Below are positions 12,099 to 51,432 of a stretch of DNA of 64,000 bases, piece after piece (the stretch's first letter is position 1; every line of letters begins with the position of its first letter). Location of the stretch: IMG/VR virus record IMGVR_UViG_3300028920_000022, positions 372,001-436,000 of that record; one strand, given 5' to 3'. The position numbers and the translations under genes are program-made. The notes under the pieces were generated by a model. The model saw nothing but the letters and a program-made list of their open reading frames with translations. It was not told where the DNA came from and did no database searches.

Positions 12099-13651
12099 AA
12101 AAAGTTAGAAAGCTTGTGGAAAAGCGTGGTGGAAAACTTTTAACGACCGAATATATTAATCAACACAAAAAGCTAGATGTTATTTGTGAAAAGGGACATT
12201 TATGGCACCCATCTGGAGAAGCATTACGAAAGGATCGTTGGTGTTCTTTTTGTCGTGGTAGCAGAATTAGCAAATCCAAAATAGATCCCAACAAAATATA
12301 CAAAATAAAGCAGGTAGCTAAGGAACGGGGAGGCGAATGTCTGTCGGATATTTATGTCAGTGCGTTGGCAAAATTAAAATTCAAGTGTAAAAATGGTCAC
12401 ATCTGGGAATCTAATTATAAATCTGTTTATAATAGAGGGTCTTGGTGTCCAATATGTTGTTTTAACCCCTCAATTTATCCCCAAAAGGGGGAAACATTTG
12501 TTCAGGCGTCACTAAAGCATGCAGCAAATATAGCCAAGAAAAGGGGTGGAAAATGTTTATCGATGGATGCTAAGACGTTGGGAAAATTAAGGTGGCGATG
12601 CGATCAGGGGCATGAGTGGAAAGCCACATATGCCAATGTTATTAATGGATCTTGGTGTCCCACATGTAAAATAACAATTTCCGAATACATTTGTAAGGGA
12701 TATTTGGAACACTTGTTTGGCGCTAAATTTTTAAAAATGAGACCACGATGGTTAAAAAACCCACACGGTGGATTATTAGAGTTGGATGGTTATTGTGAGG
12801 AGCTAGGTGTTGCCTTTGAGCATAACGGTAGGCAACATTATCATCAAGCGTGGTTTCAAACAGAATACGAATTTACCTCTCTTCAAAAACGCGATAAAGT
12901 AAAAAAAGAATTATGCGAACAAAACGGGGTTAAATTAATTATTATTCCAGCCATTGCTTATATGACTGAAATTGAGGATTTGCCCAAAGTAATAAAGGAA
13001 GAGTTTGTCAGGTTAAATATTAATAACATAAAAACATTTCCGCCGGTAAAAGAAGCAATAGACATTGATCAATATTATATGGTAAATTGGGATGATTATT
13101 TTGAGAAAATAAAGTCTATTATGGAATCGCATGGATGGGAGTGTTTATCCAAGGAATATAGGGGCGGTTTATATAAGTTAAAAATAAAATGCAATAAAGG
13201 ACATGTTTTTGACGAGTTTCCATGCAATATCAAAAAGTGGAAAGGGTGTCTAGAGTGTAAAAAAGAGAGAAACAGAGAGTCCATGCTTGTCAAAGCTTAC
13301 GCATTAGCAAAGAATCGGGGCGGAGAATGTTTATCTTCTGAATACAAAAACAACCATTCAAAGATGTTGTGGAAATGTAGTTGTGGCAATATTTGGGAAG
13401 CCAGTTACAATTGTATTCAGCGAGGAACGTGGTGTCCTCCATGTTCTATTATAAGGCGGGCAAACAAAAAACGACTGGGTATAGATGTTTATCAAAAAGC
13501 GGCGAAGAAAAAGGGAGGAAAATGTCTTTCCAAGGAAGTAAGTAGTTGTTTTGACGAGATAGAATTCGAGTGTGGGCAAGGACATAGATGGTTTGCGCGA
13601 GCGGATCAAGTGAAAAATACGGACAGCTGGTGTCCGAAATGCAACTACTAA
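12077..13651 (+). CDS. Zn-ribbon-repeat PD-(D/E)xK endonuclease (homing-endonuclease-like)
   Basis: Repeated C..GH.W....WCP.C units around LELDGYCEELGVAFEHNGRQHY. Confidence 0.75.
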   Translation: MREKWNIEKVRKLVEKRGGKLLTTEYINQHKKLDVICEKGHLWHPSGEALRKDRWCSFCRGSRISKSKIDPNKIYKIKQVAKERGGECLSDIYVSALAKLKFKCKNGHIWESNYKSVYNRGSWCPICCFNPSIYPQKGETFVQASLKHAANIAKKRGGKCLSMDAKTLGKLRWRCDQGHEWKATYANVINGSWCPTCKITISEYICKGYLEHLFGAKFLKMRPRWLKNPHGGLLELDGYCEELGVAFEHNGRQHYHQAWFQTEYEFTSLQKRDKVKKELCEQNGVKLIIIPAIAYMTEIEDLPKVIKEEFVRLNINNIKTFPPVKEAIDIDQYYMVNWDDYFEKIKSIMESHGWECLSKEYRGGLYKLKIKCNKGHVFDEFPCNIKKWKGCLECKKERNRESMLVKAYALAKNRGGECLSSEYKNNHSKMLWKCSCGNIWEASYNCIQRGTWCPPCSIIRRANKKRLGIDVYQKAAKKKGGKCLSKEVSSCFDEIEFECGQGHRWFARADQVKNTDSWCPKCNY

Positions 13652-13860
13652 CTGATTTTTTAACCAAGCGCGGACACACAATAGACACACCATTACATGG
13701 GGTTTGGCGTATTTTTTGCGTCAATTGTGAACATTATTTCTATTACGATGAAGAGGGCATTTGGTATGGGGTGGATCTTGGCAAGTATTCAATATATTTG
13801 CGATACGATATTAACCCGATACCATGCAAAGAATTAATCATTCGGGATATCATCAAATGA
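13639..13860 (+). CDS. Small GH-CxxC protein with IIxxII tail, copy 1
   Basis: RGH...CVNC...CKELIIRDIIK*; start moved to the internal ATG. Confidence 0.7.
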   Translation: MQLLTDFLTKRGHTIDTPLHGVWRIFCVNCEHYFYYDEEGIWYGVDLGKYSIYLRYDINPIPCKELIIRDIIK

Positions 13861-14135
13861 TCAACGAACTTAAAAACTTCAAACAGTTTTTGTGTAATTT
13901 AGGTCACATACTGGTCGAGTTTGATATTGGTAGCGTACCTATAGACCCTGATGGATATTTTAAACCAGGAACATATCTTAGATGTGTTGAATGTGATTAT
14001 ATTTTTTGTTTATTGGACGGGGAAAATCACACTGATGTTTGGCATTGTTTACACAGTTGTTTACCGGAATCTTGGAATAAATATACTGAGCAACAAACCT
14101 GCAAAGAGTTGATTATCAAAAGCATAATCAAATGA
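13857..14135 (+). CDS. Small GH-CxxC protein with IIxxII tail, copy 2
   Basis: LGH...CVEC...CKELIIKSIIK*; ATGA overlap. Confidence 0.75.
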   Translation: MINELKNFKQFLCNLGHILVEFDIGSVPIDPDGYFKPGTYLRCVECDYIFCLLDGENHTDVWHCLHSCLPESWNKYTEQQTCKELIIKSIIK

Positions 14136-14431
14136 CCCACGAAGTAAAACAATTCATAAAGTTTTTGTCAGATTTGGGACACAAACCGTACAAGTTTGAT
14201 GTTTCAGCTGGTCTAAAATATGGACATTATTTCAAATGTAGTGAATGCGACTATGTTTTTTGCTTGTTATTAGAGAATTATGACGATACACATTATCACT
14301 ACAACTATGGAAGATATTGGTTTAGTTATTACCCAAGTTTTCCAGAAAGCTGGCGGTATAATAATTATGTGAACCCAGAATTGGAGCCAACAAGCTGTGC
14401 GGATATAATAATCAAAAACATAATAACATGA
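14132..14431 (+). CDS. Small GH-CxxC protein with IIxxII tail, copy 3
   Basis: LGH...CSEC...CADIIIKNIIT*. Confidence 0.75.
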   Translation: MTHEVKQFIKFLSDLGHKPYKFDVSAGLKYGHYFKCSECDYVFCLLLENYDDTHYHYNYGRYWFSYYPSFPESWRYNNYVNPELEPTSCADIIIKNIIT

Positions 14432-14697
14432 TTTCTTTCCAAAACCTATACAAACTAGGACACAAACTAAATACGTTTGATATTTCTAGTATAGTTTTAA
14501 CGGGTGTTCGGTTTAAACCTGGAATATATCTAAAATGCAGTGAGTGTGGACATATTTTCTATTTACTGAACAAAGCTAATTGTGATACAGATATTTGGTT
14601 TTGTGCGAGTAATGATATGCTTGATGGGTGGGATCTGTATAATCGCGGGAAACCGCCGACTTGCGATGAGTTAGTGATCAAAGAAATTATTAAATGA
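14428..14697 (+). CDS. Small GH-CxxC protein with IIxxII tail, copy 4
   Basis: LGH...CSEC...CDELVIKEIIK*. Confidence 0.75.
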   Translation: MISFQNLYKLGHKLNTFDISSIVLTGVRFKPGIYLKCSECGHIFYLLNKANCDTDIWFCASNDMLDGWDLYNRGKPPTCDELVIKEIIK

Positions 14698-14939
14698 CAG
14701 CTTTAGAAAAACTCCATATCGATGGGCACGACGTAGTAGAAACGGATCTTTCACACATACCACATTTAAATATAGGTTTTAATATTGGCAAGTATGTTTT
14801 GTGCAATAAGTGTGATCATATTTTTTGTGTTATAAATAATGATGTATGGTTTTGTGTTAGTCGCGAATTAATATATGGTTGGCGAAAATATAAAAAACAT
14901 ACGTGCAAAGAGCTTATTATTCAGGAAATTATCAAATGA
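14694..14939 (+). CDS. Small GH-CxxC protein with IIxxII tail, copy 5
   Basis: DGH...CNKC...CKELIIQEIIK*. Confidence 0.75.
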   Translation: MTALEKLHIDGHDVVETDLSHIPHLNIGFNIGKYVLCNKCDHIFCVINNDVWFCVSRELIYGWRKYKKHTCKELIIQEIIK

Positions 14940-15184
14940 TAACATTAGAAAGCCTGTCCACATTTGGTCATGAATTAACCGAGATAGACGTTTCTTCGCT
15001 AGAGTGGCTAAACTCCGGCACATATCTAAAATGTCAAAAATGCGATTATATTTTTTGTTTGTTGGATGGTGCAGAACAGAGTAGCGAGATTTGGTTTGGT
15101 AATGATTTAACTTACGGCTGGAAATTATACAACAATTTTCTGTACACTTGCGATGAATTAATAATCAAAGATGTTATCAAATGA
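14936..15184 (+). CDS. Small GH-CxxC protein with IIxxII tail, copy 6
   Basis: FGH...CQKC...CDELIIKDVIK*. Confidence 0.75.
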   Translation: MITLESLSTFGHELTEIDVSSLEWLNSGTYLKCQKCDYIFCLLDGAEQSSEIWFGNDLTYGWKLYNNFLYTCDELIIKDVIK

Positions 15185-15414
15185 GCCCAGAAGACGAAGT
15201 TAAGGAGATTCTTTCTGAGAAGGGACATAATATAATATTTGTGGAAGAATCAGTAAACGGAACTTGGTTTAAGTGTGTTAACTGTGGTTATTTTTTCCAC
15301 ATTTCTAAAAATAACATTACAATTTGGGTTTACGGAGAAAACATATATCCTTTTTTGTATGACCGTGATACAAATACCTGCAATGATTTTATCATCAAAA
15401 GCATAATTAAGTAA
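15181..15414 (+). CDS. Small GH-CxxC protein with IIxxII tail, copy 7
   Basis: KGH...CVNC...CNDFIIKSIIK*. Confidence 0.75.
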   Translation: MSPEDEVKEILSEKGHNIIFVEESVNGTWFKCVNCGYFFHISKNNITIWVYGENIYPFLYDRDTNTCNDFIIKSIIK

Positions 15415-15659
15415 TGGATTTTCATAATTTTCTGAAGGAAAGAAATCATACAGTTTCTTTTTATTGCGCCAAATACGATCAACAGTTTTTTGTTTGTTCA
15501 AAATGTGGATATTATTTTTATCAAAACGTGACTTTTAGGGATATAAATCAAATTTGGTTTTGCGATGACATTGACGGATGGTTTACGTTGTACAACGCCA
15601 CCGATGATAGGTTTAAACTAACTTGTGATGAGTTTATAATTATGGGTATTATAAAGTGA
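15414..15659 (+). CDS. Small (G)H-CxxC protein with IIxxII tail, copy 8
   Basis: RNH...CSKC...CDEFIIMGIIK*. Confidence 0.75.
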   Translation: MDFHNFLKERNHTVSFYCAKYDQQFFVCSKCGYYFYQNVTFRDINQIWFCDDIDGWFTLYNATDDRFKLTCDEFIIMGIIK

Positions 15660-15877
15660 TCAGTCAAGATTTTTATTCCACACTTTCTGCTTTGGGACAT
15701 AGTGTCACATTTGATTCTTCAATTATAAACGGGTTTTGGGTACGGTGTTTGAAATGCGATTGTTTATTCTATTGTGGGCAGGCGGAACAGAAAATTTTGA
15801 TAATTTTTGCTGATGGTTTTCAAGTATATAATGGAGAAACATGTTTAGAGTTGACTATTAAGGAAATCATCGAGTGA
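15656..15877 (+). CDS. Small GH-CxxC protein with IIxxII tail, copy 9
   Basis: LGH...CLKC...CLELTIKEIIE*. Confidence 0.75.
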   Translation: MISQDFYSTLSALGHSVTFDSSIINGFWVRCLKCDCLFYCGQAEQKILIIFADGFQVYNGETCLELTIKEIIE

Positions 15878-16122
15878 AAAATAGTTTAGAAGCGTTTCTT
15901 TCTGAACGTGGTCACAAAGTTATGGCGTGGGAATCAGAATCTCTTAAACACCTATCTCGTGGTGTATATGTAAAGTGTGTCAAATGTGAGTGCGTATTTG
16001 CTAAATTATTTAATAGTATAGAGTTTAATCGAATTTGGTTAAAGCCGGCAAAATTTTTCGGGTGGCAGGTATACGAGGCTGAGACTTGTGATGATATGAT
16101 TATTAAGGAAATAATTGAATGA
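15874..16122 (+). CDS. Small GH-CxxC protein with IIxxII tail, copy 10
   Basis: RGH...CVKC...CDDMIIKEIIE*. Confidence 0.75.
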   Translation: MKNSLEAFLSERGHKVMAWESESLKHLSRGVYVKCVKCECVFAKLFNSIEFNRIWLKPAKFFGWQVYEAETCDDMIIKEIIE

Positions 16123-16334
16123 TTACTAAACAGGAATTTTTGACCACGATTGCTCCGGCGGGACATTCTATCGAATGGTTTTCTGAAAATGTTTGTCACT
16201 GTGTAGTTTGTGGTTGTAGCTTTTTGGTCTCAAATAGTGGCTGGATGTTGATATCGATTGATGGTGGGCGAAATTATATTAACCACACCAACTTAACTTG
16301 CAGCCAATTAATAATACGAGCAATAATCGAATGA
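16119..16334 (+). CDS. Small GH-CxxC protein with IIxxII tail, copy 11
   Basis: AGH...CVVC...CSQLIIRAIIE*. Confidence 0.75.
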   Translation: MITKQEFLTTIAPAGHSIEWFSENVCHCVVCGCSFLVSNSGWMLISIDGGRNYINHTNLTCSQLIIRAIIE

Positions 16335-16561
16335 AGAATTATCTGAAAACATATTTGCAAAGAAAAGGGCATAAAGATTTAGAATGTCGTTTCGAGAATG
16401 CAGACGGTGTTGTTTTTCTTTGTCGAGACTGTAGTTGGTTGTTTCTTTATGATGGTTCCAACATAGCTATACACGGGTTTACAAATATTGTCATGGTTGA
16501 TGATTATGATGACAATTCCCCCTCTTGCCAGGAACTAATAATCAGAGACATTGTCACCTAA
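16331..16561 (+). CDS. Small GH-CxxC protein with IIxxII tail, copy 12
   Basis: KGH...CRDC...CQELIIRDIVT*. Confidence 0.75.
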   Translation: MKNYLKTYLQRKGHKDLECRFENADGVVFLCRDCSWLFLYDGSNIAIHGFTNIVMVDDYDDNSPSCQELIIRDIVT

Positions 16562-16826
16562 AATATTAACTCACAATGGACACGTAGGTGTCTTTTTGGA
16601 ACACTCTAGTTTGAGTGGTTTGGGAACAACTATTCCCATTGATGTGTACAAATGTCACAAATGCGAGCTTTGTTTCATAAAGGATGTTGAACATTTTTTC
16701 GCAGTGGTAAAGAGATTTTGGAGTCACAACAAATATGATTATTTTTGGGCACAATACGATTATCCAAAACCTGGAGTGTTATGGGCATGTGACGAAAAAG
16801 ATCGAATAATCCAAGAAATCATTTGA
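16551..16826 (+). CDS. Small GH-CxxC protein with IIxxII tail, copy 13
   Basis: NGH...CHKC...CDEKDRIIQEII*. Confidence 0.7.
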   Translation: MSPKILTHNGHVGVFLEHSSLSGLGTTIPIDVYKCHKCELCFIKDVEHFFAVVKRFWSHNKYDYFWAQYDYPKPGVLWACDEKDRIIQEII

Positions 16827-16899
16827 AATAATTCGTGCTTGCTTGTCGAGCGCAAGTAACCGTTGGAAGTATTGCTTGGCAGTTTTCGAAGGATAAAAC

Positions 16900-19655: not shown

Positions 19656-19875
19656 GGAAATCATGGGAAGCATAACTAAAAAAATACGCAAGAAGGCTGA
19701 AAAATATCAAAAAGCCCTAGAAATTGTTGAGAGCAGTTTAGATAACATAGAGATGCCTGAAAGTTTTGAAACGTATGATTTGGCTGATTCTGTTAAATCA
19801 GAAATTGAAAAAGCCAAAATCGATCGTCGTCAAGCAAGAAACAGGCGAAAGGCGGTGAAGCGTGGTCGTAGATAG
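19648..19875 (+). CDS. Small basic hypothetical protein
   Basis: Overlapping coupled ORF. Confidence 0.5.
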
Positions 19876-20410
19876 AACAAAGGGAGTTACTTTGTGGTTG
19901 ACCGGGTTATCTGGCGCAGGTAAAACTACTGTTGCCCAAGCGCTAGAAACTCGCTTGATTAATTATGATATCAATTGCTATCGGCTGGATGGTGACGAAC
20001 TACGTACAGGGCTGTGTTCTGGGCTGGGTTTTAGTAAAGAAGATCGCTCAGAAAATATAAGAAGAGTTGCGGAGGTTTCTAAATTATTCGCAAATGCAGG
20101 TTTAGTTTCTATAGTAAGTTTAATCAGTCCATATATTGAAGACAGGGACAATTGTCGAAAAATTCATGAAAACGCAAATTTACCATTTGTTGAGGTTTAT
20201 GTTGATGCCCCATTAAATGTATGCGAAAGTAGAGATCCGAAAGGATTATATAAAAAAGCCAGAGCTGGAGAAATAAAAAAGTTCACCGGAGTAAGTGATC
20301 CATACGAGGGACCATTGAATCCTGAAATAATATTACGAACAGCTGAAAATTCAATTAATGACTGTGTAGAATTATGTTTGAAATATTTGCAAGAAAATCG
20401 CTTGACATAG
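19862..20410 (+). CDS. cysC: Adenylyl-sulfate kinase
   Basis: [43 protein letters not shown]. Confidence 0.95.
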
Positions 20411-24325: not shown

Positions 24326-24411
24326 TGCGGGAATGTAGCAAAGGCGGCTAGCCAGTCTCATAAGCTGGCGTCCATTGATCGCGAAGGGTTCGATTCCCTC
24401 TCCCGCAACCA
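24326..24411 (+). tRNA. tRNA with CAT anticodon (Met or Ile2), encoded CCA, long variable region
   Basis: TGCGGGA/TCCCGCA-A-CCA; CCAGT-CTCATAA-GCTGG; GGTTCGATTCC. Confidence 0.85.
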
Positions 24412-24468: not shown

Positions 24469-25875
24469 ATGGGAAAATTGAAGGTGTGGAAAGTTGGCGC
24501 AGCTGGAGAACCCAGTTTTCCTGCCAATTTTGAGGTGGCTAAAAAAGCCGTTCTCCAAGTTACAGATATTAAAACAAATCGTAATAAGTATTATGCCATA
24601 GAACTACACTCTGCTGGCAATAAATATAGAGTGTTTACTCATTATGGTCGAACAGATGATCTGGACACGAATCCTAATGCTGGGGTGCGCGAGGTTCGTT
24701 ACGGCAACTTGTCTGAATGTGAAGCAACCTATCATCAGATATATAGTCAAAAAACTAGCGCAAGAAAAGGATATAAGGAACTTAGCTTAGCATCTTCGCG
24801 TATTGGTTCGTCTCAATCGGTTGGTAAATCTAGCGGACATGTTGATGACAAAACGCTTGAAAAACTAAACAACGGTAACAAGAAAGTGATAAAAAACAAA
24901 GTTTCTACACTTTCTCCCGTTGTACAAGATTTTGTTTCTTATATTTATGCTGAAGCCACTAATGCCCTAACTAGCACAATTAATGCCAGCATTACCGCTA
25001 ATGGTATCGAAACGCCTCTTGGTGTTTTGACACTGGGTCAGATTGATAAGGGGCAAAAGATTTTGGATGAGCTTTATGATTTATTCAATTCAAAAAAGAG
25101 CCAATCAATACGTGACCATATGGTAGAACTGAGTGGTGAGTTTTATACAGTAATTCCTCACAGAATAGGCAGAACTAGGGCTGCTGTAGAAGCTGCTGTT
25201 ATTGATAGTTTAGTAGATTTTAATGCTAAGCAAGACACATTACAACTTATGCGAGACATGTTAAGTGTTTCGGGTAAAGACTCCCAGGTACTTATTAACC
25301 CTGAAATTGATAAGAAATATAATGCTTTGGGTTGCGAAATTAAAACTGTAGATAATAAAAAGTATCAAGAATTGAAGGATTATGTAGAGAAATCACAAAT
25401 AAAAACCAGAAATATTAAAGTAAAGAATATATATTCATTATGCAGACCAGAAGAACAAAAGGTTTTTGCTGATAATATTTCAAATAAACGATTACTTTTT
25501 CACGGTTCTAGGGCAAAAAACTGGGTAGGTATTCTTTCCCGTGGTTTGTTGCTTCCTAAGATTGTGGTTAGCTTGGGTGTAAACCGAACTGACGCAGGTT
25601 GGCTTGGAAATGGTATTTATTTCGGAGATGCTGTTTGCACTACATTATACTACACGTCTCCTGGAAGGCAGAGAAACACCCGGATGATGGCGATAGCGAA
25701 TGTAGCATTAGGAAAGATGAAGGATTTTAATAGAATTACGTATGGATTAAAAGGACCACCCGCTGGATATCATAGTTGTCATGGTGTACGTGGAACCTCA
25801 TTTGCAGATGATGAATATGTAATTTATGACCAGAAACAGCAGAAACTTGAGTATTTAGTGGAGTATGTGTCATGA
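24469..25875 (+). CDS. Poly(ADP-ribose) polymerase-like protein 2 (WGR + regulatory + catalytic domains)
   Basis: NRNKYY...YGR WGR domain, TPLGVL, FYTVIPH, LFHGSR / LGNGIYF / DDEYVIY. Confidence 0.92.
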   Translation: MGKLKVWKVGAAGEPSFPANFEVAKKAVLQVTDIKTNRNKYYAIELHSAGNKYRVFTHYGRTDDLDTNPNAGVREVRYGNLSECEATYHQIYSQKTSARKGYKELSLASSRIGSSQSVGKSSGHVDDKTLEKLNNGNKKVIKNKVSTLSPVVQDFVSYIYAEATNALTSTINASITANGIETPLGVLTLGQIDKGQKILDELYDLFNSKKSQSIRDHMVELSGEFYTVIPHRIGRTRAAVEAAVIDSLVDFNAKQDTLQLMRDMLSVSGKDSQVLINPEIDKKYNALGCEIKTVDNKKYQELKDYVEKSQIKTRNIKVKNIYSLCRPEEQKVFADNISNKRLLFHGSRAKNWVGILSRGLLLPKIVVSLGVNRTDAGWLGNGIYFGDAVCTTLYYTSPGRQRNTRMMAIANVALGKMKDFNRITYGLKGPPAGYHSCHGVRGTSFADDEYVIYDQKQQKLEYLVEYVS

Positions 25876-27060: not shown

Positions 27061-27303
27061 ATGAGAAATCACAGTTTCATTCGGGTGGAAACACCACAAA
27101 GTTACTCCGCTCACAAAACAGCACAGTATTATAGATGTCAAAGATGTAATTTATTAATGTATGACACTGGCATTTCTCGTTACGTTTCTTGTCTGCATGA
27201 TACTGGCATTATGCCAACGCCGCTTATGTCGCCAGACACAATAGACTGTGAAATGCAAGAAATAATATGGAAAGAAGAAATTATTAAGGACATAATAGAA
27301 TGA
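27061..27303 (+). CDS. H-CxxC small protein with IIKDIIE tail
   Basis: NH...YYRCQRC...EEIIKDIIE*. Confidence 0.7.
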   Translation: MRNHSFIRVETPQSYSAHKTAQYYRCQRCNLLMYDTGISRYVSCLHDTGIMPTPLMSPDTIDCEMQEIIWKEEIIKDIIE

Positions 27304-27548
27304 AACTTGGCACCCACGATTTTGTTGAAATATGCGAACCTATAAATAGTCCAATTTTTAACGCAGAATGTCAATATTATCGATGTATACGATGTAATCT
27401 TTTGATTTATAAAAGTAAGCTTTATCATCCGGGAGAGTGTGTTACATCATTGGTAGAGAGTAGTAGAACAGTCTCACCAGATAGTATCAACTGTGCCGAA
27501 CAAGAGAAAAAGTTTCGGTTACAATCGATTAAGGACATAATAGAATGA
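27300..27548 (+). CDS. H-CxxC small protein with IKDIIE tail
   Basis: GTH...YYRCIRC...QSIKDIIE*. Confidence 0.7.
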   Translation: MKLGTHDFVEICEPINSPIFNAECQYYRCIRCNLLIYKSKLYHPGECVTSLVESSRTVSPDSINCAEQEKKFRLQSIKDIIE

Positions 27549-40015: not shown

Positions 40016-40672
40016 TAATAGAAATTAGAGCTGCCGAAGGTGGCAAAGATGCACAACTTCTAGTAGAAGATCAGCTTAGGGCTTATACCAAAGCTGCGGA
40101 GCGGGAGTGTCTTTGACGCTACTCTGTTAGAACATAGACAGGCATTTGTTTCTGTATTATTTGAGGGAAAAGGGGCAAATAATTTATTCAAAAATGAGGC
40201 GGGAGGACATCGGTTTCAACGAGTCTCTCCCACCGAAAAACGAGGGCGTGTCCATACCTCTACCATTACCGTAGCAGTATTGGACGCCGATACCAAGCCT
40301 CAGTTCGAGCTTGACGAACGTGATGTAGAAATCATTACATCACGTGGCAGCGGACCGGGCGGTCAACACAGAAATATGACAGATAGCTGTGTTGTAGCTA
40401 AACACATACCAACTGGTATATCTGCTAAGATCGATTATAGATCTCAGTCACAAAGTAAACAGCTGGCGCTCAAAATTCTTGCCTCTCGTGTGGAGAATAT
40501 ACAGCAAGAACAATGGGCAAATGACCGAGATAAAAAGAGGAAACGACAGGTGGGTCGTGGACAACGTGGAGATAAGCGGAGAACGTATCGGGAACGGGAC
40601 GATCAAATTGTTGATCATGTAACCGGCAAGAAATGGAAGTTTAGTCGTTGGATGCGAGGGATTTGGTCCTAA
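40000..40672 (+). CDS. Class I peptide chain release factor lacking domain 1, expressed via +1 frameshift (about 223 aa)
   Basis: ORF1 40000-40116 (IEIRAAEGGKDA) ends CTT-TGA-C. The +1 frame from 40115 reads ...NEAGGHRFQRVSPTEKRGRVHTS...GSGPGGQH...RTY and joins the track ORF 40280-40672. Confidence 0.88.
40102..40117 (+). promoter_or_regulatory. prfB-type programmed +1 frameshift signal
   Basis: CGGGAG-TGT-CTT-TGA-C, compared with canonical AGGGGG-TAT-CTT-TGA-C. Confidence 0.88.
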
Positions 40673-42092: not shown

Positions 42093-42424
42093 TGCGCTTT
42101 CCTCATCACTATGGACTTAAATTCTGGCGGACCACCAATCACAACAACATCTTCAGCATTATACTGGCATGGAACTTTTTCAAACCATAAGTTATCAAAA
42201 ACTGTATCTGTACTTGGGCTTCCTATAATATATGAGTTGAATACACGTATCGTTATTGGGTTAATTTGTGAGTAAGGAAACGCAAAGTTAGCCTTAAAGA
42301 CATGTTTAAGTCTGCATATATCAAAACGAATAATATCGCTAAAGAACAGATTATTGTCTCTCCACAGATTTCTGGCGGTACCGACAATCACCCCTTCACA
42401 TTCAATTAGAATGTTTGTTGACAT
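42089..42424 (-). CDS. Hypothetical protein
   Basis: Coupled ORF. Confidence 0.5.
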   Translation of the reverse strand: MSTNILIECEGVIVGTARNLWRDNNLFFSDIIRFDICRLKHVFKANFAFPYSQINPITIRVFNSYIIGSPSTDTVFDNLWFEKVPCQYNAEDVVVIGGPPEFKSIVMRKAQ

Positions 42425-42690
42425 TATTGTATTATGTTTTTTATAACGTATTCGTCACAAGAATACAAATCACCAACACAAGAATATAAATCACCAACAT
42501 ATATAATGTTATTTTCTGTTTTTAAACTGCACGCGAAAAACCCACACTTTTTACATTGATATTGTATAGCAACCTCAAACACATTATTATCTATAACCTC
42601 AAAATCATGTGTGCTTAATTTTTCATTATTTATGGGATAATGATTCCACCGTCTTTTTATGATTTCGGAAATATTAATTTTGTGCATCAC
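42424..42690 (-). CDS. H-CxxC small protein with VIKNIIQ tail
   Basis: THDF...CKKC...CDEYVIKNIIQ*; internal 7-aa (21-bp) duplication VGDLYSC. Confidence 0.7.
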   Translation of the reverse strand: MMHKINISEIIKRRWNHYPINNEKLSTHDFEVIDNNVFEVAIQYQCKKCGFFACSLKTENNIIYVGDLYSCVGDLYSCDEYVIKNIIQ

Positions 42691-43548: not shown

Positions 43549-44004
43549 CTACACAATTATATCCTCAATAACCACATCATCGTCGGTGTACGAACAAGGA
43601 ATTGTCCACCACTCTAGTGCTTCATTTAGAACTGCATTTCCGCTGGGATGATAACAAGAACCACCAGCAATACTTTTCAAATATGGAACTACTATTTGCT
43701 CACCTTGGATGGCGCTAGCATGCAAATGTTTACCGGGGTTAGTTGAAGCCAATATTCTACATTTTTTGCATATACAACTATATTCTCCAAAATTCCATAT
43801 TGTTGTTGCACTAACCGACCTGCCTTTTACAATAATCTGTGCCAAATCGTGTTTTTCGTCAAACTCACCGTAACGCAAACTTGTTACACATCCTTTTGAA
43901 TCACGTGCATACCAACGAACCCCACACTTCACACAGAAATCATAAGTCATTCCGTTATAACTAAATTGATGCGGTTTCATTATTTTAGGAATTCGTAATC
44001 CCAA
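43549..44004 (-). CDS. Double H-CxxC protein with VIEDIIV tail
   Basis: Two H...CxxC units; ends C....DDVVIEDIIV*. Confidence 0.6.
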   Translation of the reverse strand: MGLRIPKIMKPHQFSYNGMTYDFCVKCGVRWYARDSKGCVTSLRYGEFDEKHDLAQIIVKGRSVSATTIWNFGEYSCICKKCRILASTNPGKHLHASAIQGEQIVVPYLKSIAGGSCYHPSGNAVLNEALEWWTIPCSYTDDDVVIEDIIV

Positions 44005-45847: not shown

Positions 45848-45873
45848 ATCAAGATTCGAAATTGTTTATGGTT

Positions 45874-46371
45874 TTAATACCAACTTTTTTCAGGAGTTTC
45901 CCAATCGAAAAATACCGTGTCGCAAATTAATGAAAAGATTCTATCCTGTGGAGGAAGGGTGTCGACTTCATATTTTACGTCTAATCGTGCACATTTATTT
46001 TCCAATCGTTTAATATCACGATTGAAAACGTTTAGCTTCGTTTGCGTTTTCTTTGCAACCGCCTTTAGAACTTCAGAACCGATGTGAACATCCGCATCTT
46101 CCTGATCCATATCCAACCTAGCAGTCATTCCATCATCCCAAACCAGATAAGTCGTTATATCGACACTAGTTTTAACGTTTACTTGACAAGATATTTTTTG
46201 CGGTTCAGATAAACGTAAACATTCCCGAATAAGCGGATATAACTCGGTTTTCGTTGGCGCCTTTAAATCTTCTTTTTCTAGTTTTTCTATTACTGCATCA
46301 TAAACAGCTCTAGGTCTCTGGTTTTTGTTTAGGTATTTGATTCCTTTGCCAAACGAAAAATCCATGCTCAT
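45874..46371 (-). CDS. Hypothetical protein
   Basis: Coupled to the AAA gene. Confidence 0.55.
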   Translation of the reverse strand: MSMDFSFGKGIKYLNKNQRPRAVYDAVIEKLEKEDLKAPTKTELYPLIRECLRLSEPQKISCQVNVKTSVDITTYLVWDDGMTARLDMDQEDADVHIGSEVLKAVAKKTQTKLNVFNRDIKRLENKCARLDVKYEVDTLPPQDRIFSLICDTVFFDWETPEKSWY

Positions 46372-47189
46372 TCCTCTCCCTCAATCTCATCACCCATGTT
46401 CTGTAACCGTACTATCGCTTCCCGATAGTCCGTATCAAAAAACGCCACAGATATGAATAACTCCTTCAAATGAGCTAAACTTAATCCCTCGGAATCTTTT
46501 GACCACACATCAATGGGAAGTTGACTAAAATCCTCAGATTGATTTATTAAATGCTGTAAATAAGCAAATCTCACCTTTTCACTAGGATACCCAATCTCTA
46601 CACACCGATCAAATCTGCTCGGTCTGTCCTTTATTCGCCCAGCTAATGCCCCAATGTTGTTCGTTGTAGCTAAAAACACTACCTTGTCATATCCACCAAT
46701 TCCATCCAACATGTTGAGAATGTCAGATTCGTCATAATACTCCAGCAAATGATCTATATCTTCCATCACTACTACTATGGGAGTCTCCGGTTGAACATTC
46801 CTAAATGACCCCATGTTGGCGGTAAAAACATTATAATTTTTGCAAAGAACCCCTATTCCTCCAGCCGCCACTACATCATTTAATATCATCTTGATCGCAC
46901 AGCTTTTGCCAGTCCCGTGCGGTCCATAAAATAAAATCCCCCGCCTAAATGTAAAATTGTTTCGCCTGAATAATTCTTCTTTTTTCCAAAATGACGATAT
47001 TTCTTTTACTATTTCATCGATTATTGAATCTTCAAATTTAACTAAATCTGTGTTTTCTTCAATTTTAGATAGATAAGCCTCTCCCATCCCGTTGGCAGAC
47101 GGTAAGTATATCCCAGATGGCAGATTCTCAAATTTAGTGTGCTCTTGCCTGGGAAAAAAATCTATGTTGTTCTTGGTCTGCCAGTGCAT
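46368..47189 (-). CDS. AAA+ ATPase
   Basis: GPHGTGKS, VVMEDID, ATTN, RPSRFD. Confidence 0.9.
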   Translation of the reverse strand: MHWQTKNNIDFFPRQEHTKFENLPSGIYLPSANGMGEAYLSKIEENTDLVKFEDSIIDEIVKEISSFWKKEELFRRNNFTFRRGILFYGPHGTGKSCAIKMILNDVVAAGGIGVLCKNYNVFTANMGSFRNVQPETPIVVVMEDIDHLLEYYDESDILNMLDGIGGYDKVVFLATTNNIGALAGRIKDRPSRFDRCVEIGYPSEKVRFAYLQHLINQSEDFSQLPIDVWSKDSEGLSLAHLKELFISVAFFDTDYREAIVRLQNMGDEIEGEE

Positions 47190-47355: not shown

Positions 47356-48060
47356 CTACTTTGTCGGAGATTTCCATGTTCTGCAACTCCAATTTTCCGG
47401 AACTATAAATTCAGGATCCTGCTCCGCTATCTTCTTTACAAAATTGTCCACATGCCGACATCGACGAATTGCTTTCTTGCCTACCCAATATTTGCCGTTC
47501 CGCCGTGGTGAACATTTTCCCCTGCCATAAGAATCTATCCATACCGCAGGAGGTCCCCCACAATCCCTCTTGTATTTCTCCAATAAAGCATAAGCAAATG
47601 CTACATTCGTTGCTGGATCCCTTAGTTTCTTTAATGTTAAGCCCGCCCAAGGTCTCCCAATCTGTGGATCCATCTCTTCCCATGTTTTAACCCAGCTAGG
47701 AGCCATTCTACTAATCTGCATCGGTCCAATGCTCTGCCCTACACTTTTGGGTTTTAAACTTATATTACAGGGTCCTGGACGGGTACATGATAAATATCCT
47801 CCCACTACCCTCGGATCCCCGTCCCTCCCATGCCGACGATACCTCGATTCCTCAAATGACATCGCCGCCAATATCGTCGGATCTATGTACTCGTTTACTA
47901 ATTTCCCACGAGATCCAGTCTCACTGAAATATTCCCCCAACGCTTGAACATCTTCTCGGTGTTGGATATGAATCTTTTTCTGAGAATGTTCAATTGTGGG
48001 AGCTTCTTTGTACAATAAAGAAAACATGCATAAAATTAATAGTTTAGTGTAGGTTATCAT
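47356..48060 (-). CDS. Lytic transglycosylase (SLT-like) with signal peptide
   Basis: FEESRY, IGPMQI, L.DPATNV, Y motifs. Confidence 0.7.
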   Translation of the reverse strand: MITYTKLLILCMFSLLYKEAPTIEHSQKKIHIQHREDVQALGEYFSETGSRGKLVNEYIDPTILAAMSFEESRYRRHGRDGDPRVVGGYLSCTRPGPCNISLKPKSVGQSIGPMQISRMAPSWVKTWEEMDPQIGRPWAGLTLKKLRDPATNVAFAYALLEKYKRDCGGPPAVWIDSYGRGKCSPRRNGKYWVGKKAIRRCRHVDNFVKKIAEQDPEFIVPENWSCRTWKSPTK

Positions 48061-48833
48061 TCGTTGTCCTCCAATAGTTGTTTTTGCTCTTCAAGACATA
48101 ATCTGGTTATTACTGTCCTCGATACACCTAAGTTTTTTGCCATGTCCCGCCTGGATACTTTGGCTCGTCTCCATTCCCTAATCTTCGTTAATAACTCAGG
48201 TGTACTCTCTAAATATACATTCTGCTTTCGATTCTCTATCTTGGCATGCTTTATCCCAGTAACAGAAGATCGGTTCCTGCCACTTAGAATTGCTTGAACC
48301 GTTGCCATCGAAATATCAAATATTCCCGCTAATTCGTCCTGAGTCTTGTCCGTTTCCTTGGACATTCTTACCAACTCTAATACCTCTTTGTCGTCTAATT
48401 GTTTGCGAGGTGGCGTTATTATGGCGGTCACTGGGTCCCATCCATTTCTAATTCTTAAGTATAAAGCATTAGGGCTTAACCCCTTTACTTCCGCCCACTC
48501 TGGAATTGTTTTTGTTACGCTTCCAATAGTTATTTTAACCGTATCTTCGCGATTTAGGTTTTGCTCCTGATTTGTTGCCCAACGGCAATTACCGGGTTCA
48601 TAGTTTCCATTATTATCTATACGTTCAATAGATTGTTCTGATGAGCGTTCTCCCATATCTTCTTTAAATGCTTCAAAAGAATTCCTCCACCTTTCACAAA
48701 TTTGAACCCCTCTACCCCCGTATCGGTGGTAACTTTTATGTTTGGGGTTTGTGCATCTTTGAATCATTGCCATCCAGGTGATGTAAGTTGGGGTTCTAAA
48801 ACCGGGTGCTGCGTGTCCGTGATGTTTTGACAT
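48057..48833 (-). CDS. HNH-type homing endonuclease with HTH domains
   Basis: W.AM.QRC, YGGRG, SIERIDNNGNYEPGNCRWAT. Confidence 0.85.
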   Translation of the reverse strand: MSKHHGHAAPGFRTPTYITWMAMIQRCTNPKHKSYHRYGGRGVQICERWRNSFEAFKEDMGERSSEQSIERIDNNGNYEPGNCRWATNQEQNLNREDTVKITIGSVTKTIPEWAEVKGLSPNALYLRIRNGWDPVTAIITPPRKQLDDKEVLELVRMSKETDKTQDELAGIFDISMATVQAILSGRNRSSVTGIKHAKIENRKQNVYLESTPELLTKIREWRRAKVSRRDMAKNLGVSRTVITRLCLEEQKQLLEDNE

Positions 48834-48907
48834 TTTTTATTCCTTATGTTAGGGGGAACGGAACTGTTCCCTACTCTAACATATATCACGGCAACGTCAA
48901 GGCTGCA

Positions 48908-49588
48908 TCATAATTTTTTTTCGTTTTTTTCGGTAAAGCAACATCTTCCCGATGTGTCATAGTAATGCCAATATGGGGAATGAGAAGTAATCAAAGCAGC
49001 GCAACTTCTCGGTTCAGCCCAAAATCTAGAAGCCAAGCACCAACCTTCTTGCCCCTGGTTACACCGCACCCACTCTTCGGCATTTCCCATCATATCCCAA
49101 GCGCCACTTTGGGAAACGCAGGATTTACGATTACCAGCAGGTTCGCTTTGATCCAGGTATTCCATTTCTTTTTCATCGCGAATAAAGACTTTATATTCAT
49201 CAGCTCCGCGATATCTTTTATCATAATTGCACAAACCGGTATTATCGCCAGGAACGAATTTAGGCAATTCATCGCCGAAGGGATATTTTTTACCTTGAGG
49301 ACCTTCGCAGGCAGCGATCCATTCTTCTGCGGTACAGGGTCTTTTTCCTACGGATTTACAAAGTTCATCAATATTCATTATTTTATCGTCATCGTAAGGT
49401 TCTGGCAGGGCACTCAGACCTAGGAGAGGTTTATGACCTTTAATATTTGGCCATTCGTATTTATCTATACAGGCGGTTGGGGTAGCTGGGACCATACCTT
49501 CTGGGCAAGGATTTTTAGGAGTAAAAGTGCCACCTAAACTACTAAATAGTAAAACGGCGGTCAGAGTTGTGTAAGCAATTCGTTTCAT
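48908..49588 (-). CDS. Formylglycine-generating enzyme (FGE-sulfatase) domain secreted protein
   Basis: CPEGMV, CIDKYEWPN, GKRPCTAEEW, YPFG, DMMGNAEEW, GRCC. Confidence 0.8.
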   Translation of the reverse strand: MKRIAYTTLTAVLLFSSLGGTFTPKNPCPEGMVPATPTACIDKYEWPNIKGHKPLLGLSALPEPYDDDKIMNIDELCKSVGKRPCTAEEWIAACEGPQGKKYPFGDELPKFVPGDNTGLCNYDKRYRGADEYKVFIRDEKEMEYLDQSEPAGNRKSCVSQSGAWDMMGNAEEWVRCNQGQEGWCLASRFWAEPRSCAALITSHSPYWHYYDTSGRCCFTEKNEKKL

Positions 49589-49742
49589 GGTCTCCTTTTG
49601 AGGTGTAAAACGGACCGTACTTCTCTTTCGAAAAGGTCTCTCCTGGACAGTCGCACCGGCAGAATTCCTCGCCTAAGCGGACCTAGTGCTTTCTATGTTA
49701 TTTATGATTAATAATTAGCATATTTGAGGTAGGGAAATGTAA

Positions 49743-49988
49743 TTATTTGTAGTTTTTCCAATCTGCGGTAGATTTGAAGATTGGTGGATTTTGTTTTTCT
49801 TTTTTGACTCTTTGTTCGCTTTCTTGTTTAAGGCGGGCGATTTCTTTTGCTGCGATTTGATCCAGATATCCGCACATATCGCATGCATACCCTGGAGTAT
49901 ATATTCCCAGATATTGTCCTTTAGTTGGGTAGCCACATTTGGGACAATCTTCGTTACTAGCGGTGTGATATTTTTTGAACCAAGACAT
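49743..49988 (-). CDS. Small Zn-ribbon protein
   Basis: CPKCG...CDMCG. Confidence 0.55.
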   Translation of the reverse strand: MSWFKKYHTASNEDCPKCGYPTKGQYLGIYTPGYACDMCGYLDQIAAKEIARLKQESEQRVKKEKQNPPIFKSTADWKNYK

Positions 49989-49999
49989 TTTGACCTTTG

Positions 50000-50254
50000 T
50001 TATGTAATTATGTTCTGAATTATAAAATCATTACAATTTATTTGTTCAGGATTCAATGCCGTAGCAATACTTATCTGAGAAATATAAAAATTTATTTCAT
50101 TTTGAAATATTCCTTTAAATATTATTAATCCGCAATTCTGGCATTGCCAATATTTTGGACGAATATCGTTAATCAAATTAATACCATCATTAAGTTTTGC
50201 AACCTCTTCTGCTGTTAACTCCTTCAGTTCGTGTGTACCTATTTTGAGACTCAT
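50000..50254 (-). CDS. H-CxxC small protein with IIQNIIT tail
   Basis: GTH...CQNC...CNDFIIQNIIT*. Confidence 0.7.
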   Translation of the reverse strand: MSLKIGTHELKELTAEEVAKLNDGINLINDIRPKYWQCQNCGLIIFKGIFQNEINFYISQISIATALNPEQINCNDFIIQNIIT

Positions 50255-50658
50255 TCTATTATATCTTTGATTATTTTTTCATTTTCGGTTAAAAATTCTT
50301 CTCTATACACGTTATCTGCTACCCACGATACTCTTAAAGAATTGCTATGAGAATATCCAGTTAAGATAGCGTTACAAACATGGGTAATATATTTTTTATG
50401 ATTTTCTTTCCAACCGAACATAAAATGAAATTTATTATCCACACTGGTTCCACGAAAACGTTCTTTTACAAAATGTTCGATATCAAAGTTTTCGTCAAAT
50501 AAAATCAAACCTTCTAATTCACCATGAACATCTTCATATCTTCCGCAATATTCGACGGTCATGGTGAGGCTATAAGCCCAACCGATAATTTCTTCGTTGT
50601 ACAGTACTTGAACACTATTCGATAATGTAGCGAATGTCGATATTAGTTCTACAGGCAT
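50251..50658 (-). CDS. Hypothetical protein with IIKDIIE tail
   Basis: Ends ENEKIIKDIIE*; no CxxC. Confidence 0.65.
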   Translation of the reverse strand: MPVELISTFATLSNSVQVLYNEEIIGWAYSLTMTVEYCGRYEDVHGELEGLILFDENFDIEHFVKERFRGTSVDNKFHFMFGWKENHKKYITHVCNAILTGYSHSNSLRVSWVADNVYREEFLTENEKIIKDIIE

Positions 50659-51001
50659 CGCACAGAGTACGATGCCAGCTTAATTCGTCTCGAAGTTTTC
50701 CTGGTTTACCACAATCTTCGCAAACGTGGTCGCTTTTATTTTCGGCTTCCATAACCAAATCTTGAACTATTTTAATTTCTTGTTCCGTTACATTTGGGTA
50801 ACTTAAATATCTATAACCAAATCTCAAACCTCCCAACTTTTCTTTAATGTAGGTAGCTTCAATTTTAATATCTGTTTTTTGAATTTCTATACATAATTCA
50901 CGCAGGAGTTCGTACCAACCATCTCCGCACCCTATGTAGACGTGGGATACAAAGATTTTGGGGAATTCTTGACGCAATTTGTCGGTTAATTCTGGGCTCA
51001 T
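50615..51001 (-). CDS. Conserved phage protein (GDGW...KEKLGGLR...CEDCG) with IRYIIE tail
   Basis: Motif pattern; ends CRTNIDIRYIIE*. Confidence 0.65.
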   Translation of the reverse strand: MSPELTDKLRQEFPKIFVSHVYIGCGDGWYELLRELCIEIQKTDIKIEATYIKEKLGGLRFGYRYLSYPNVTEQEIKIVQDLVMEAENKSDHVCEDCGKPGKLRDELSWHRTLCDACRTNIDIRYIIE

Positions 51002-51432
51002 TCTATTATATCCTTAATGATACGTTCGTTTTCGTTTTTTTCTACGTCTTGTGGAAGGAACTTGTAAATTATAAACATGCATGGTTCGGTCAAAATATTC
51101 TTTGCATTACACTTTTCTAAAATGTCAAAAATAATAATTATAATAATAGGCAGTAAAACTATTGGATATGCCCACAAAAGTAAAAACAGAATTATCGGCG
51201 GGTATTCTTTGAAAAAACCATTAATACCAGCCTGGACATCTGTTTTGTATATTTTGTCGCCTGCGTGTAATTCTATTTTGTATATCATTTCTGTAAGTAT
51301 AAATGCCAAACAAAAAGGGAATCCCATAAGATACATAGTCAGCAATCCCCACGGCATAGGGGACAATTTAGCAACTCCCATGCCGGCGAGGAAGAAAATG
51401 ATGCTACCTATTAGAAAGTTTCTTATTTTCAT
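50998..51432 (-). CDS. Membrane protein with IIKDIIE tail
   Basis: About three TM segments; ends ENERIIKDIIE*. Confidence 0.65.
   Translation of the reverse strand: MKIRNFLIGSIIFFLAGMGVAKLSPMPWGLLTMYLMGFPFCLAFILTEMIYKIELHAGDKIYKTDVQAGINGFFKEYPPIILFLLLWAYPIVLLPIIIIIIFDILEKCNAKNILTEPCMFIIYKFLPQDVEKNENERIIKDIIE

What the first reader, a model, noticed from the sequence alone, without database searches (positions are those of the whole stretch)
13639..51432. Shared C-terminal 'IIKxII' tail on about 21 proteins, including unrelated bodies
Seen: beyond the 13-gene array, the tail also ends ORFs 27061, 27300, 42424, 43549 and 50000 (H-CxxC type). It also ends proteins with different bodies: 50251 (ENEKIIKDIIE), the membrane protein 50998 (ENERIIKDIIE) and 50615 (IDIRYIIE). 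It always sits at the extreme C-terminus and its codons vary. Inference: a modular C-terminal tag, such as a docking peptide for a hub or AAA protein, a virion-packaging or compartment-import signal, or a degron. Alternative: in some copies the K-E/D codons supply an AAGGA RBS for the next gene, so the tail could partly be a coupling or recombination cassette.
Basis: partly seen in the sequence, partly recalled or inferred. Interest (0 to 1): 0.8.

Follow-up and report, generated by a model that had tools for sequence, protein, structure and literature searches.

The report
Shared C-terminal tag in huge phages
About one gene in six in this stretch of a 459-kb uncultivated phage, and hundreds of genes in related phages, encodes a small protein ending in the same 13-residue helix (…L-T-x-D-E-x-I-I-K-D-I-I-E-stop) on unrelated protein bodies, which looks like an undescribed virus-encoded address or docking label.

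Summary
The window has 21 ORFs ending in the tail (19 by a strict regex, against 0.03-0.05 expected). The strict motif is terminal 12 times and internal once in all six frames.

The window is part of a 458,729-bp marine-sediment phage contig. About 97 kb of that contig already shows 90 tail genes, including a run of about 65 consecutive ones.

The exact IIKDIIE-stop DNA pattern occurs 22 times or more in a second 435-kb phage contig and in more than 120 metagenome stretches. In 185,579 cellular genomes it occurs only at chance level.

I collected 371 distinct tail-bearing ORFs, median length 88 aa. About half are an orphan H…CxxC…C zinc-ribbon family with 1,459 clusters in public data. The rest include DUF4116 repeat proteins, SH3-like barrels, DUF6794, a few membrane proteins and many ORFans.

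Codon use, K↔R exchanges and near-random synonymous sites show selection on the protein. The Lys-Asp codons additionally serve as an AAGGA ribosome-binding site when the next gene overlaps.

Best reading: a modular, strictly C-terminal amphipathic docking or address helix read by one common partner. The partner is unknown and the function is inferred.

The parts
13639..16826 (+). Array of 13 stop/start-overlapping (ATGA) genes for 70-100 aa H..CxxC..C zinc-ribbon proteins. All end in the tail.
   Evidence: AF2 model of 14428-14697 has pLDDT 86.6, with the tail as helix 79-88 starting at the fourth Zn ligand
13639..13860 (+). array gene 1, tail KELIIRDIIK
13857..14135 (+). array gene 2, tail KELIIKSIIK
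14132..14431 (+). array gene 3, tail ADIIIKNIIT
14428..14697 (+). array gene 4, tail DELVIKEIIK (the modelled member)
14694..14939 (+). array gene 5, tail KELIIQEIIK
14936..15184 (+). array gene 6, tail DELIIKDVIK
15181..15414 (+). array gene 7, tail NDFIIKSIIK. In a related strain all four substitutions in this tail are synonymous.
15414..15659 (+). array gene 8, weak tail variant DEFIIMGIIK
15656..15877 (+). array gene 9, tail LELTIKEIIE (AAG GAA gives AAGGA before the next start)
15874..16122 (+). array gene 10, tail DDMIIKEIIE
16119..16334 (+). array gene 11, tail SQLIIRAIIE
16331..16561 (+). array gene 12, tail QELIIRDIVT
16551..16826 (+). array gene 13 (last; no gene overlaps its stop), tail KDRIIQEII
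27061..27303 (+). zinc-ribbon type, tail EEIIKDIIE, 7-residue insert between the last Cys and the tail
27300..27548 (+). zinc-ribbon type, tail LQSIKDIIE
42424..42690 (-). zinc-ribbon type, tail DEYVIKNIIQ
43549..44004 (-). 151-aa protein with two CxxC pairs, weak tail DDVVIEDIIV
50000..50254 (-). zinc-ribbon type, tail NDFIIQNIIT
50251..50658 (-). 135-aa ORFan body, not a zinc ribbon, with tail LTENEKIIKDIIE
   Evidence: no homolog of the body among 5.8 billion proteins
50615..51001 (-). 128-aa protein with a different body ending CDACRTNIDIRYIIE. Marginal tail: the ortholog in the 435-kb phage lacks it.
50998..51432 (-). membrane protein (2-3 hydrophobic helices) with tail ENERIIKDIIE

Best explanation
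The tail is a modular recognition element of about 13 residues placed strictly at the C-terminus. It has an N-cap (L-T/S) followed by a helix of about three turns. Its paired isoleucines (Phi-I-x-x-I-I) form one hydrophobic face, and its Glu, Lys, Asp and Glu positions are also conserved.

Shown: it is kept by purifying selection on the amino-acid sequence while the proteins carrying it diverge beyond recognition or have different folds.

Inferred: it is read in trans by one common partner. That would give a very large, fast-evolving set of small soluble accessory proteins (at least 90 in this phage) a shared address or docking handle.

The sub-mechanism I consider most likely (about 0.3) is an address label that loads these proteins into a phage-built assembly, either the capsid interior for co-injection or another proteinaceous compartment. 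This is how the T4 capsid-targeting sequence, microcompartment encapsulation peptides and encapsulin loading peptides work.

Next most likely (about 0.2) is a tether. In that case each variable binder module (zinc ribbon, SH3-like barrel, DUF4116 solenoid) would be docked to one effector machine such as an AAA+ unfoldase.

In the zinc-ribbon family the helix starts at the fourth zinc ligand and is probably also part of the fold. That family is probably where the tag originated.

Shown as a secondary use: in overlapping gene arrays the Lys-Asp codons (AAG-GAy) double as the Shine-Dalgarno sequence of the next gene.
For: Position and enrichment:
- 19 terminal matches against 0.03-0.05 expected.
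- The strict motif is terminal 12 times and internal once in six frames.

Protein-level selection:
- All synonymous Ile and Lys codons are used. K-R and I-V-M exchanges occur.
- Codon identity given identical residues is 0.58 between adjacent genes and 0.49 between unrelated loci.
- In a related strain the array bodies show 16 non-synonymous and 16 synonymous changes. The tails show 2 and 6, none at the I-I-K-I-I core.

Modularity:
- 330 tail ORFs fall into 206 BLAST clusters once the tail is removed.
- Bodies include an orphan zinc alpha/beta fold with no structural match and an SH3-like barrel.
- Bodies also include DUF4116 repeats and DUF6794, membrane proteins and ORFans.
- In the SH3-like family the tail helix has lower confidence (pLDDT 72) than the body (79-91).

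Lineage specificity and breadth:
- At least 22 exact IIKDIIE-stop matches in a 435-kb phage contig and 6 in this one.
- More than 120 metagenome stretches.
- Only 39 isolated, chance-like matches in 596 Gb of cellular genomes, none with neighbouring tails.
- 1,459 clusters of the zinc family, and all 133 small top hits carry the tail.

Other points:
- Tail variants are genome- or array-specific without nucleotide homogenisation, as expected for co-evolution with a shared partner.
- Carriers are small (median 88 aa), 98% lack membrane segments, and they sit in hyperplastic arrays. T4 internal proteins likewise share only a targeting peptide (PMC3012670).
- The Phi-Phi-x-x-Phi-Phi spacing equals the key residues L9, I10, I13 and L14 of the PduP encapsulation peptide (PMC4594438).
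Against: No partner has been identified, and nothing was tested experimentally.

In the zinc-ribbon family the helix is predicted with confidence (pLDDT about 84) and begins at a zinc ligand. There it may be buried in cis rather than free.

More than 90 different cargo proteins per genome is far beyond any known capsid-loading or encapsulation system. Tagged membrane proteins and 200-440 aa repeat proteins fit a packaging role poorly.

No shell, encapsulin or similar gene appears in the roughly 100 kb of the contig for which Pfam annotation was seen. The other 360 kb was not examined.

Unlike encapsulation peptides, the tail has no linker and is highly conserved in sequence.

Confidence: 0.5

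Rival explanations
1. Self-association tag. The tails bundle with one another, with hydrophobic residues at the a, d, e and g positions of a short coiled-coil-like helix. The tagged proteins would then co-assemble or co-condense into one body, and no separate receptor exists.
For: The Phi-Phi-x-x-Phi-Phi-x pattern gives a wide hydrophobic face. Tails within one genome or array are homogeneous at the amino-acid level but not the nucleotide level, which mutual compatibility would require. Microcompartment encapsulation peptides with the same spacing are reported to drive aggregation or condensation of their cargo (PMC4594438; title and abstract of PMC12339742).
Against: The helix is only about 1.5 heptads long, too short for a stable free-standing bundle. 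The strict requirement for the extreme C-terminus is not explained by bundling. No oligomer prediction could be run.
Confidence: 0.17
2. Degron or timer. The tail marks early accessory proteins for unfolding and degradation by a host or phage AAA+ machine. A candidate is the classic-clade AAA protein at 46368-47189 in the same gene block.
For: The tail is strictly C-terminal, like ssrA-type tags. A 273-aa AAA protein of the PAN/Cdc48/FtsH clade lies between tail genes and has a homolog in another tail-bearing contig.
Against: The tail ends in Glu (81%) or Lys. Known C-terminal degrons for ClpX, ClpA, Tsp and FtsH need non-polar ends, and acidic ends block them (established knowledge, not tested here). 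No protease domain was seen next to the AAA gene. The co-occurrence of the AAA gene with tails is untested.
Confidence: 0.1
3. Purely structural C-terminal helix. All carriers descend from a few ancestors, and the helix is just the slowest-evolving core element, with no partner.
For: Half of all carriers are one zinc-ribbon family in which the helix starts at a zinc ligand and is confidently modelled. All 133 small homologs found carry it.
Against: The same 13 residues end SH3-like barrels, DUF4116 solenoids, DUF6794, membrane proteins and ORFans. Solvent-facing Lys, Asp and Glu are as conserved as the hydrophobic face. In two fused double units the tail that became internal is still intact in one and has decayed in the other (P0024, P0056).
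Confidence: 0.1
4. Nucleotide-level element. The sequence is kept as a ribosome-binding or termination-reinitiation region for the next gene, or as a recombination cassette for shuffling paralogs. On this view the peptide is a by-product.
For: 65% of tails stop at TGA inside ATGA overlaps. AAG-GAy (AAGGA) is enriched when the next gene overlaps: 59% against 26%, P = 6e-6. One strain variant of gene 16119-16334 is identical over 33 residues and then diverges, including its tail, which suggests exchange between paralogs.
Against: Synonymous sites are near random. All Ile codons are used, and K to R changes need two or three base changes. Tails on last-in-array and isolated genes are equally conserved and use AAA at the background rate. 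AU-richness alone would not fix position-specific residues.
Confidence: 0.03

Closest known systems
Capsid targeting sequence (CTS) of T4-type internal proteins
   Same: A short conserved terminal peptide is the only thing shared by a diverse, fast-evolving set of small phage proteins, and it directs them to one destination (PMC3012670). Size range and hyperplastic gene clusters are similar.
   Different: The CTS is N-terminal and removed by the prohead protease. T4 has only a few such proteins. Here the tag is C-terminal, has no sequence resemblance, sits on at least 90 proteins per genome, and virion location is unknown.
Bacterial microcompartment encapsulation peptides (PduP, PduD, EutC, CcmN)
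   Same: Both are short terminal amphipathic helices. The hydrophobic spacing Phi-Phi-x-x-Phi-Phi matches the key PduP residues L9, I10, I13 and L14. Both are portable between unrelated cargo (PMC4594438).
   Different: Encapsulation peptides are 15-20 aa, joined by a poorly conserved linker, not conserved in sequence, usually N-terminal, and encoded next to shell genes. The phage tail abuts the body, is nearly invariant, is always C-terminal, and no shell genes were seen.
Encapsulin cargo-loading peptides and the peroxisomal PTS1 signal (own knowledge, not tested here)
   Same: Both are strictly C-terminal short signals on unrelated proteins read by one receptor. For encapsulins the receptor is the interior of an HK97-fold shell, the fold of phage capsids.
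   Different: The consensus sequences differ (Gly/Ser/Leu-rich for encapsulins, SKL for PTS1). There are few cargo types per system. No encapsulin gene was seen.
Constant C-terminal adaptor motifs on variable binders: the poxvirus ankyrin/PRANC (F-box-like) proteins and the C-terminal ClpX-tethering peptide of SspB (own knowledge)
   Same: The architecture is a variable target-binding body plus a constant C-terminal handle that docks to one effector machine. In poxviruses this forms large paralog families.
   Different: PRANC is a 40-50 aa domain that acts through the eukaryotic SCF ligase. The SspB peptide is a single case. No effector is identified here.

Membership tests
BMC encapsulation peptide | [quoted passage not shown] | tested here: met
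   AF2 gives helix 79-88 and helix 71-80 in two families. The Phi-Phi-x-x-Phi-Phi pattern is seen.
BMC encapsulation peptide | [quoted passage not shown] | tested here: not met
   The tail follows the last zinc ligand or the last body element directly and carries about 33 bits of conservation.
BMC encapsulation peptide | Encoded in a locus with shell proteins (Pfam PF00936 / PF03319) | tested here: inconclusive
   No such Pfam hit appears in the precomputed annotation of about 100 kb of the contig. The remaining 360 kb was not seen.
T4-type capsid targeting sequence | Conserved terminal peptide shared by otherwise unrelated small proteins in plastic loci | tested here: met
T4-type capsid targeting sequence | N-terminal position, removed by the prohead protease; proteins present in virions | tested here: not met
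   The tag is C-terminal in every case. Cleavage and virion content cannot be tested with these tools.
ssrA-like C-terminal degron | Extreme C-terminal position | tested here: met
ssrA-like C-terminal degron | Non-polar last residues (LAA-like) needed by ClpX, ClpA and Tsp | tested here: not met
   The last residue is E in 81%, and K, Q or T in most of the rest.
Shine-Dalgarno / translational-coupling element | Purine-rich AAGGA 5-10 nt before the next start codon | tested here: met
   87 of 167 Lys-type tails with an ATGA overlap carry AAGGA, against 13 of 68 without a following start.
Shine-Dalgarno / translational-coupling element | Conservation resides in the nucleotides rather than the encoded residues | tested here: not met
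Known Pfam, PHROG or solved-structure family for the zinc-ribbon carriers | Significant profile or fold match | tested here: not met
   Pfam and PHROGs give only sub-threshold zinc-ribbon hits. Foldseek against PDB, BFVD and AFDB gives no match at E below 0.1. The weak RYYR-CCHC hit (18.8 bits, cutoff 27) is below threshold.
DUF4116 repeat proteins (bodies of one carrier class) | Pfam PF13475 above the gathering score | tested here: met
   20 of the 100 longest carriers, best E = 1e-32. None of these is in the window.

The most novel reading that the evidence does not exclude
A clade of huge phages runs its own protein-sorting or tethering system. A dedicated, still unidentified receptor (capsid or compartment interior, or an unfoldase or other effector) reads a 13-residue C-terminal address helix. 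More than 90 proteins per genome, and thousands across metagenomes, carry that helix. It would be a viral analogue of PTS1, encapsulation-peptide or F-box logic, used to deploy a hypervariable arsenal of small binder proteins.
Probability: 0.45. Interest if true: 0.9.

Novelty: new variant of a known kind. Interest (0 to 1): 0.8.

Why it matters
Huge phages carry hundreds of small genes of unknown function. If a large fraction share one address or docking label, a single experiment becomes possible: fish with the peptide, or follow a GFP-tail fusion. That could reveal where this whole accessory proteome goes and which machine it serves. It would also give a portable tag for loading cargo.

Two further points stand on their own. 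The work defines a very large unannotated protein family: an H-CxxC-C zinc ribbon with an IIKxIIE helix, 1,459 clusters at 50% identity. It also provides a clean example of one coding stretch under dual selection, as a peptide and as the ribosome-binding site of the next gene.

Tried and rejected
- **Cultured phages.** Megablast of the array and tblastn of one member against 50,697 phage records found no match. There is no cultured relative and so no experimental data.
- **Alignment-based locus search.** It failed because no stretch of 7-10 columns was conserved enough.
- **Word-based homolog search with A1.** It found only the window's own proteins and three near-identical fragments.
- **ESM Atlas search.** The feature and structure search gave only sub-threshold zinc-ribbon look-alikes.
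- **Candidate receptors.** Single-protein locus searches for the 1727-aa HEAT-repeat protein and the AAA protein returned only the query contig, so co-occurrence could not be tested.
- **Recurrent non-tail neighbours.** A search around tail genes in 60 loci gave DUF4116 proteins with tail variants missed by my regex, a metallophosphatase, a macro-like family and others, but no obvious receptor.
- **Radical-SAM link.** The SPASM protein at 57163-58212 and a radical-SAM gene inside another array are unrelated; the latter is MoaA/viperin-like. Half the tails also lack the Cys, so a maturase hypothesis was dropped.
- **Read-level population analysis.** Only assembled contigs are kept for the two runs that hold this DNA.
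- **Stop-codon recoding.** Rejected, because long ORFs are intact under the standard code and all three stops end tails.
- **Literature.** Searches for the motif strings and for shared C-terminal signals in phages found nothing relevant.

Full report
**Origin of the window.** It corresponds to bases 372,001-436,000 of JGI metagenome contig Ga0272441_10000008, which is also IMGVR_UViG_3300028920_000022 and is 458,729 bp long. The sample is a marine-sediment metagenome. G+C is about 38%, and genes are densely packed with many ATGA stop/start overlaps. Recognisable genes are phage-like accessory functions:
- HNH homing endonucleases and a glucosaminidase;
- two PARP-like proteins, an ADP-ribosylglycohydrolase and NAPRTase;
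- GMP reductase, a helicase, a TnpB and two tRNAs.

No cultured phage is similar at the DNA level, and tblastn of one array protein finds nothing.

**Checking the observation.**
- In a curated set of 115 genes, 19 end in [ILVMT][IV][KRQEM]x[IV][IV]x?. The expectation is 0.03 from the internal rate and 0.05 from shuffles, P about 1e-43. The two others (27300 SIKDIIE, 50615 DIRYIIE) are near variants.
- In six-frame translation, II[KRQ]xII is terminal 12 times and internal once.
- Eighteen of the 21 align as one family with invariant His, CxxC and Cys (A1). The tail begins two residues after the last Cys.
- Three have other bodies. The 135-aa ORFan at 50251-50658 has no homolog in 5.8 billion proteins. 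The protein at 50998-51432 is a membrane protein.
- The third, the 128-aa protein at 50615-51001, is marginal. Its tail is divergent, and its ortholog in a related phage has no tail.

**Scale beyond the window.**
- *Viral contigs.* A scan of IMG/VR for DNA encoding IIKDIIE plus a stop gave 27 stretches. Six matches lie in this contig and at least 22 in a second huge contig, IMGVR_UViG_3300027740_000003 (435,004 bp). Others lie in further viral contigs.
- *Relatedness.* The two large contigs, and contigs from other metagenomes, share syntenic core genes at about 50% identity.
- *Cellular genomes.* One genome for each of 185,579 bacterial and archaeal species (596 Gb) gave only 39 isolated matches. 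Four end an ORF of 30 aa or more, and none has a second tail nearby.
- *This contig.* About 97 kb of it seen so far holds 90 strict tail ORFs. Positions 26,748-46,969 form a run of about 65 consecutive small zinc-ribbon genes.
- *Total.* I collected 371 distinct tail ORFs.
- *Exhaustive search.* A profile search with the zinc-ribbon family found 1,459 cluster representatives at E of 1e-3 or better. All 133 small proteins among the top 150 end in the tail.

**The motif.** Over 349 tails the consensus is L-[TS]-[C/E]-[DN]-E-x-I-I-[KR]-[DN]-I-I-[EK]-stop, about 33 bits. AlphaFold2 predicts the last 10 residues as a helix in two different families. L-T/S-x-D/E-E resembles a helix N-cap (my reading of the consensus, not tested), and the isoleucine pairs form one face.

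**Protein-level or DNA-level conservation.**
- Every Ile position uses ATT, ATC and ATA. Lys uses AAA and AAG. Lys is replaced by Arg through CGN and AGR codons, and Ile by Val or Met.
- Given identical residues, codons are identical in 58% of adjacent pairs, 55% of distant pairs in one locus and 49% of unrelated pairs. There is therefore no gene conversion.
- Contigs of a related strain differ from the 13-gene array by 16 non-synonymous and 16 synonymous changes in bodies. In tails the numbers are 2 and 6, none at the core positions. These numbers are small and only supportive.
- One nucleotide-level signal exists. AAG for Lys, which makes AAGGA about 9 nt before the next ATG, is used in 59% of tails whose stop overlaps the next start and in 26% (background) otherwise, Fisher P = 6e-6.

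**Modularity.**
- With the tail removed, 330 carriers fall into 206 BLAST clusters, of which 171 are singletons.
- About half are the H..CxxC..C type. Its model (pLDDT 86.6) has no match in PDB, BFVD or AFDB clusters.
- A second family is an SH3-like barrel (pLDDT 83). Its tail helix is less confident (72) than its body.
- Twenty of the 100 longest carriers are DUF4116 repeat proteins of up to 439 aa, and one is DUF6794.
- In some zinc proteins a second CxxC directly precedes the tail.
- Carriers have a median length of 88 aa. 95% are shorter than 187 aa, 98% lack membrane segments, and there is no charge bias.
- Two proteins are fusions of two units. In one the now-internal tail is intact, and in the other it has decayed.

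**Interpretation.** Shown: there is a portable, strictly C-terminal helix under strong amino-acid-level selection across unrelated bodies in one phage clade.

Inferred: it is read by a common partner. Several points favour recognition in trans over a purely structural role:
- the charged positions are conserved along with the hydrophobic face;
- the tail is obligatorily close to the free C-terminus;
- tail variants are specific to a genome or array, for example IIREIIE in the 65-gene run and MIKDIIE in the 435-kb phage.

The closest functional precedents are these:
- The T4 capsid-targeting sequence. [quoted passage not shown]
- Microcompartment encapsulation peptides, which are terminal amphipathic helices whose key PduP residues L9, I10, I13 and L14 have the same spacing (PMC4594438).

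The tail fails defining features of both. It is C-terminal and not known to be cleaved. It has no linker, it is highly conserved, and no shell genes were seen. So it is not a member of either family, only a possible functional analogue.

Other readings:
- A tethering handle for variable binder modules and a self-association tag remain open.
- An ssrA-like degron fits poorly because the end is acidic.
- A classic-clade AAA protein (46368-47189) and a 1727-aa HEAT-repeat protein (58209-63392) lie in the same minus-strand block. They are only candidates, since co-occurrence could not be tested.

**Novelty.** I found no description of this motif or family. The concept of a shared terminal address peptide is known. 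The sequence, its C-terminal placement in phages, and its scale are new: about one gene in six here, at least 90 genes in this genome, and more than a thousand protein clusters in metagenomes.

Noticed in passing
contig Ga0272441_10000008 positions 26,748-46,969 (locus L215): A run of about 65 consecutive co-directional genes of 65-100 aa, nearly all zinc-ribbon plus tail (mostly ...ISC[ND]EWIIREII[EK]). This is far larger than the 13-gene array in the window.
   Followed up: partly
window 1-1386: The first ORF (458 aa, Laminin_G_3 / concanavalin-like lectin domain) has about 55% G+C, against 34-41% for the rest of the window. It may be a recent acquisition or a compositionally distinct receptor-binding gene.
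   Followed up: no
window 10629-12098, 24469-25875, 28864-30006, 31034-32050: An NAD/ADP-ribose gene set: two PARP-like proteins with the PARP regulatory domain (one also with WGR), NAPRTase and an ADP-ribosylglycohydrolase. Possible macro-domain proteins (judged from sequence motifs, not confirmed by a profile search) recur near tail genes in related loci (L019, L027, L090). In three phages the slot after the first PARP gene holds tail genes.
   Followed up: partly
window 57163-58212, 48908-49588, 19862-20410: A SPASM-domain protein with an unusual Cx7CxxC motif, an FGE-sulfatase-like domain protein and an APS kinase. Together they hint at a cysteine-modification or sulfur-chemistry theme. 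The SPASM gene overlaps the stop of the 1727-aa HEAT-repeat gene and has a homolog in the 435-kb phage (L008).
   Followed up: partly
window 55612-56805 (+): A TnpB (IS605 OrfB / Cas12f-like) gene sits on the opposite strand inside the long minus-strand gene block.
   Followed up: no
window 40280-40672 (+): A small RF-1-domain protein (ArfB-like peptidyl-tRNA hydrolase type) lies at the point where gene orientation switches. It is 60% identical to a protein in the 435-kb phage (L015, L178).
   Followed up: no
window 16119-16334 versus protein P0005: A variant from another sample is identical over the first 33 residues and then only about 40% identical, with a different valid tail (VIKSIIK instead of IIRAIIE). 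This mosaic pattern suggests exchange of 3' halves between paralogs.
   Followed up: partly
proteins P0024 and P0056: Two zinc-ribbon units are fused into one ORF. The tail that became internal is intact in one (IIKNIID) and degenerate in the other (IIKKHIG).
   Followed up: no
proteins P0009-P0016 and others: Long bacterial proteins (700-4600 aa) with 7-20 tandem repeats of a GH...C...YxCxxCGKxF unit match the N-terminal two thirds of the zinc-ribbon profile but lack the tail. They are possibly a distant cellular relative of the body, or a compositional match.
   Followed up: no
window 12077-13651 and 48057-48833: HNH/homing-endonuclease-like genes lie directly upstream of the 13-gene array and within the minus-strand block that carries tail genes.
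   Followed up: no
window 24326-24411 and 53073-53149: tRNA-Met (CAT) and tRNA-Arg (TCT) genes.
   Followed up: no
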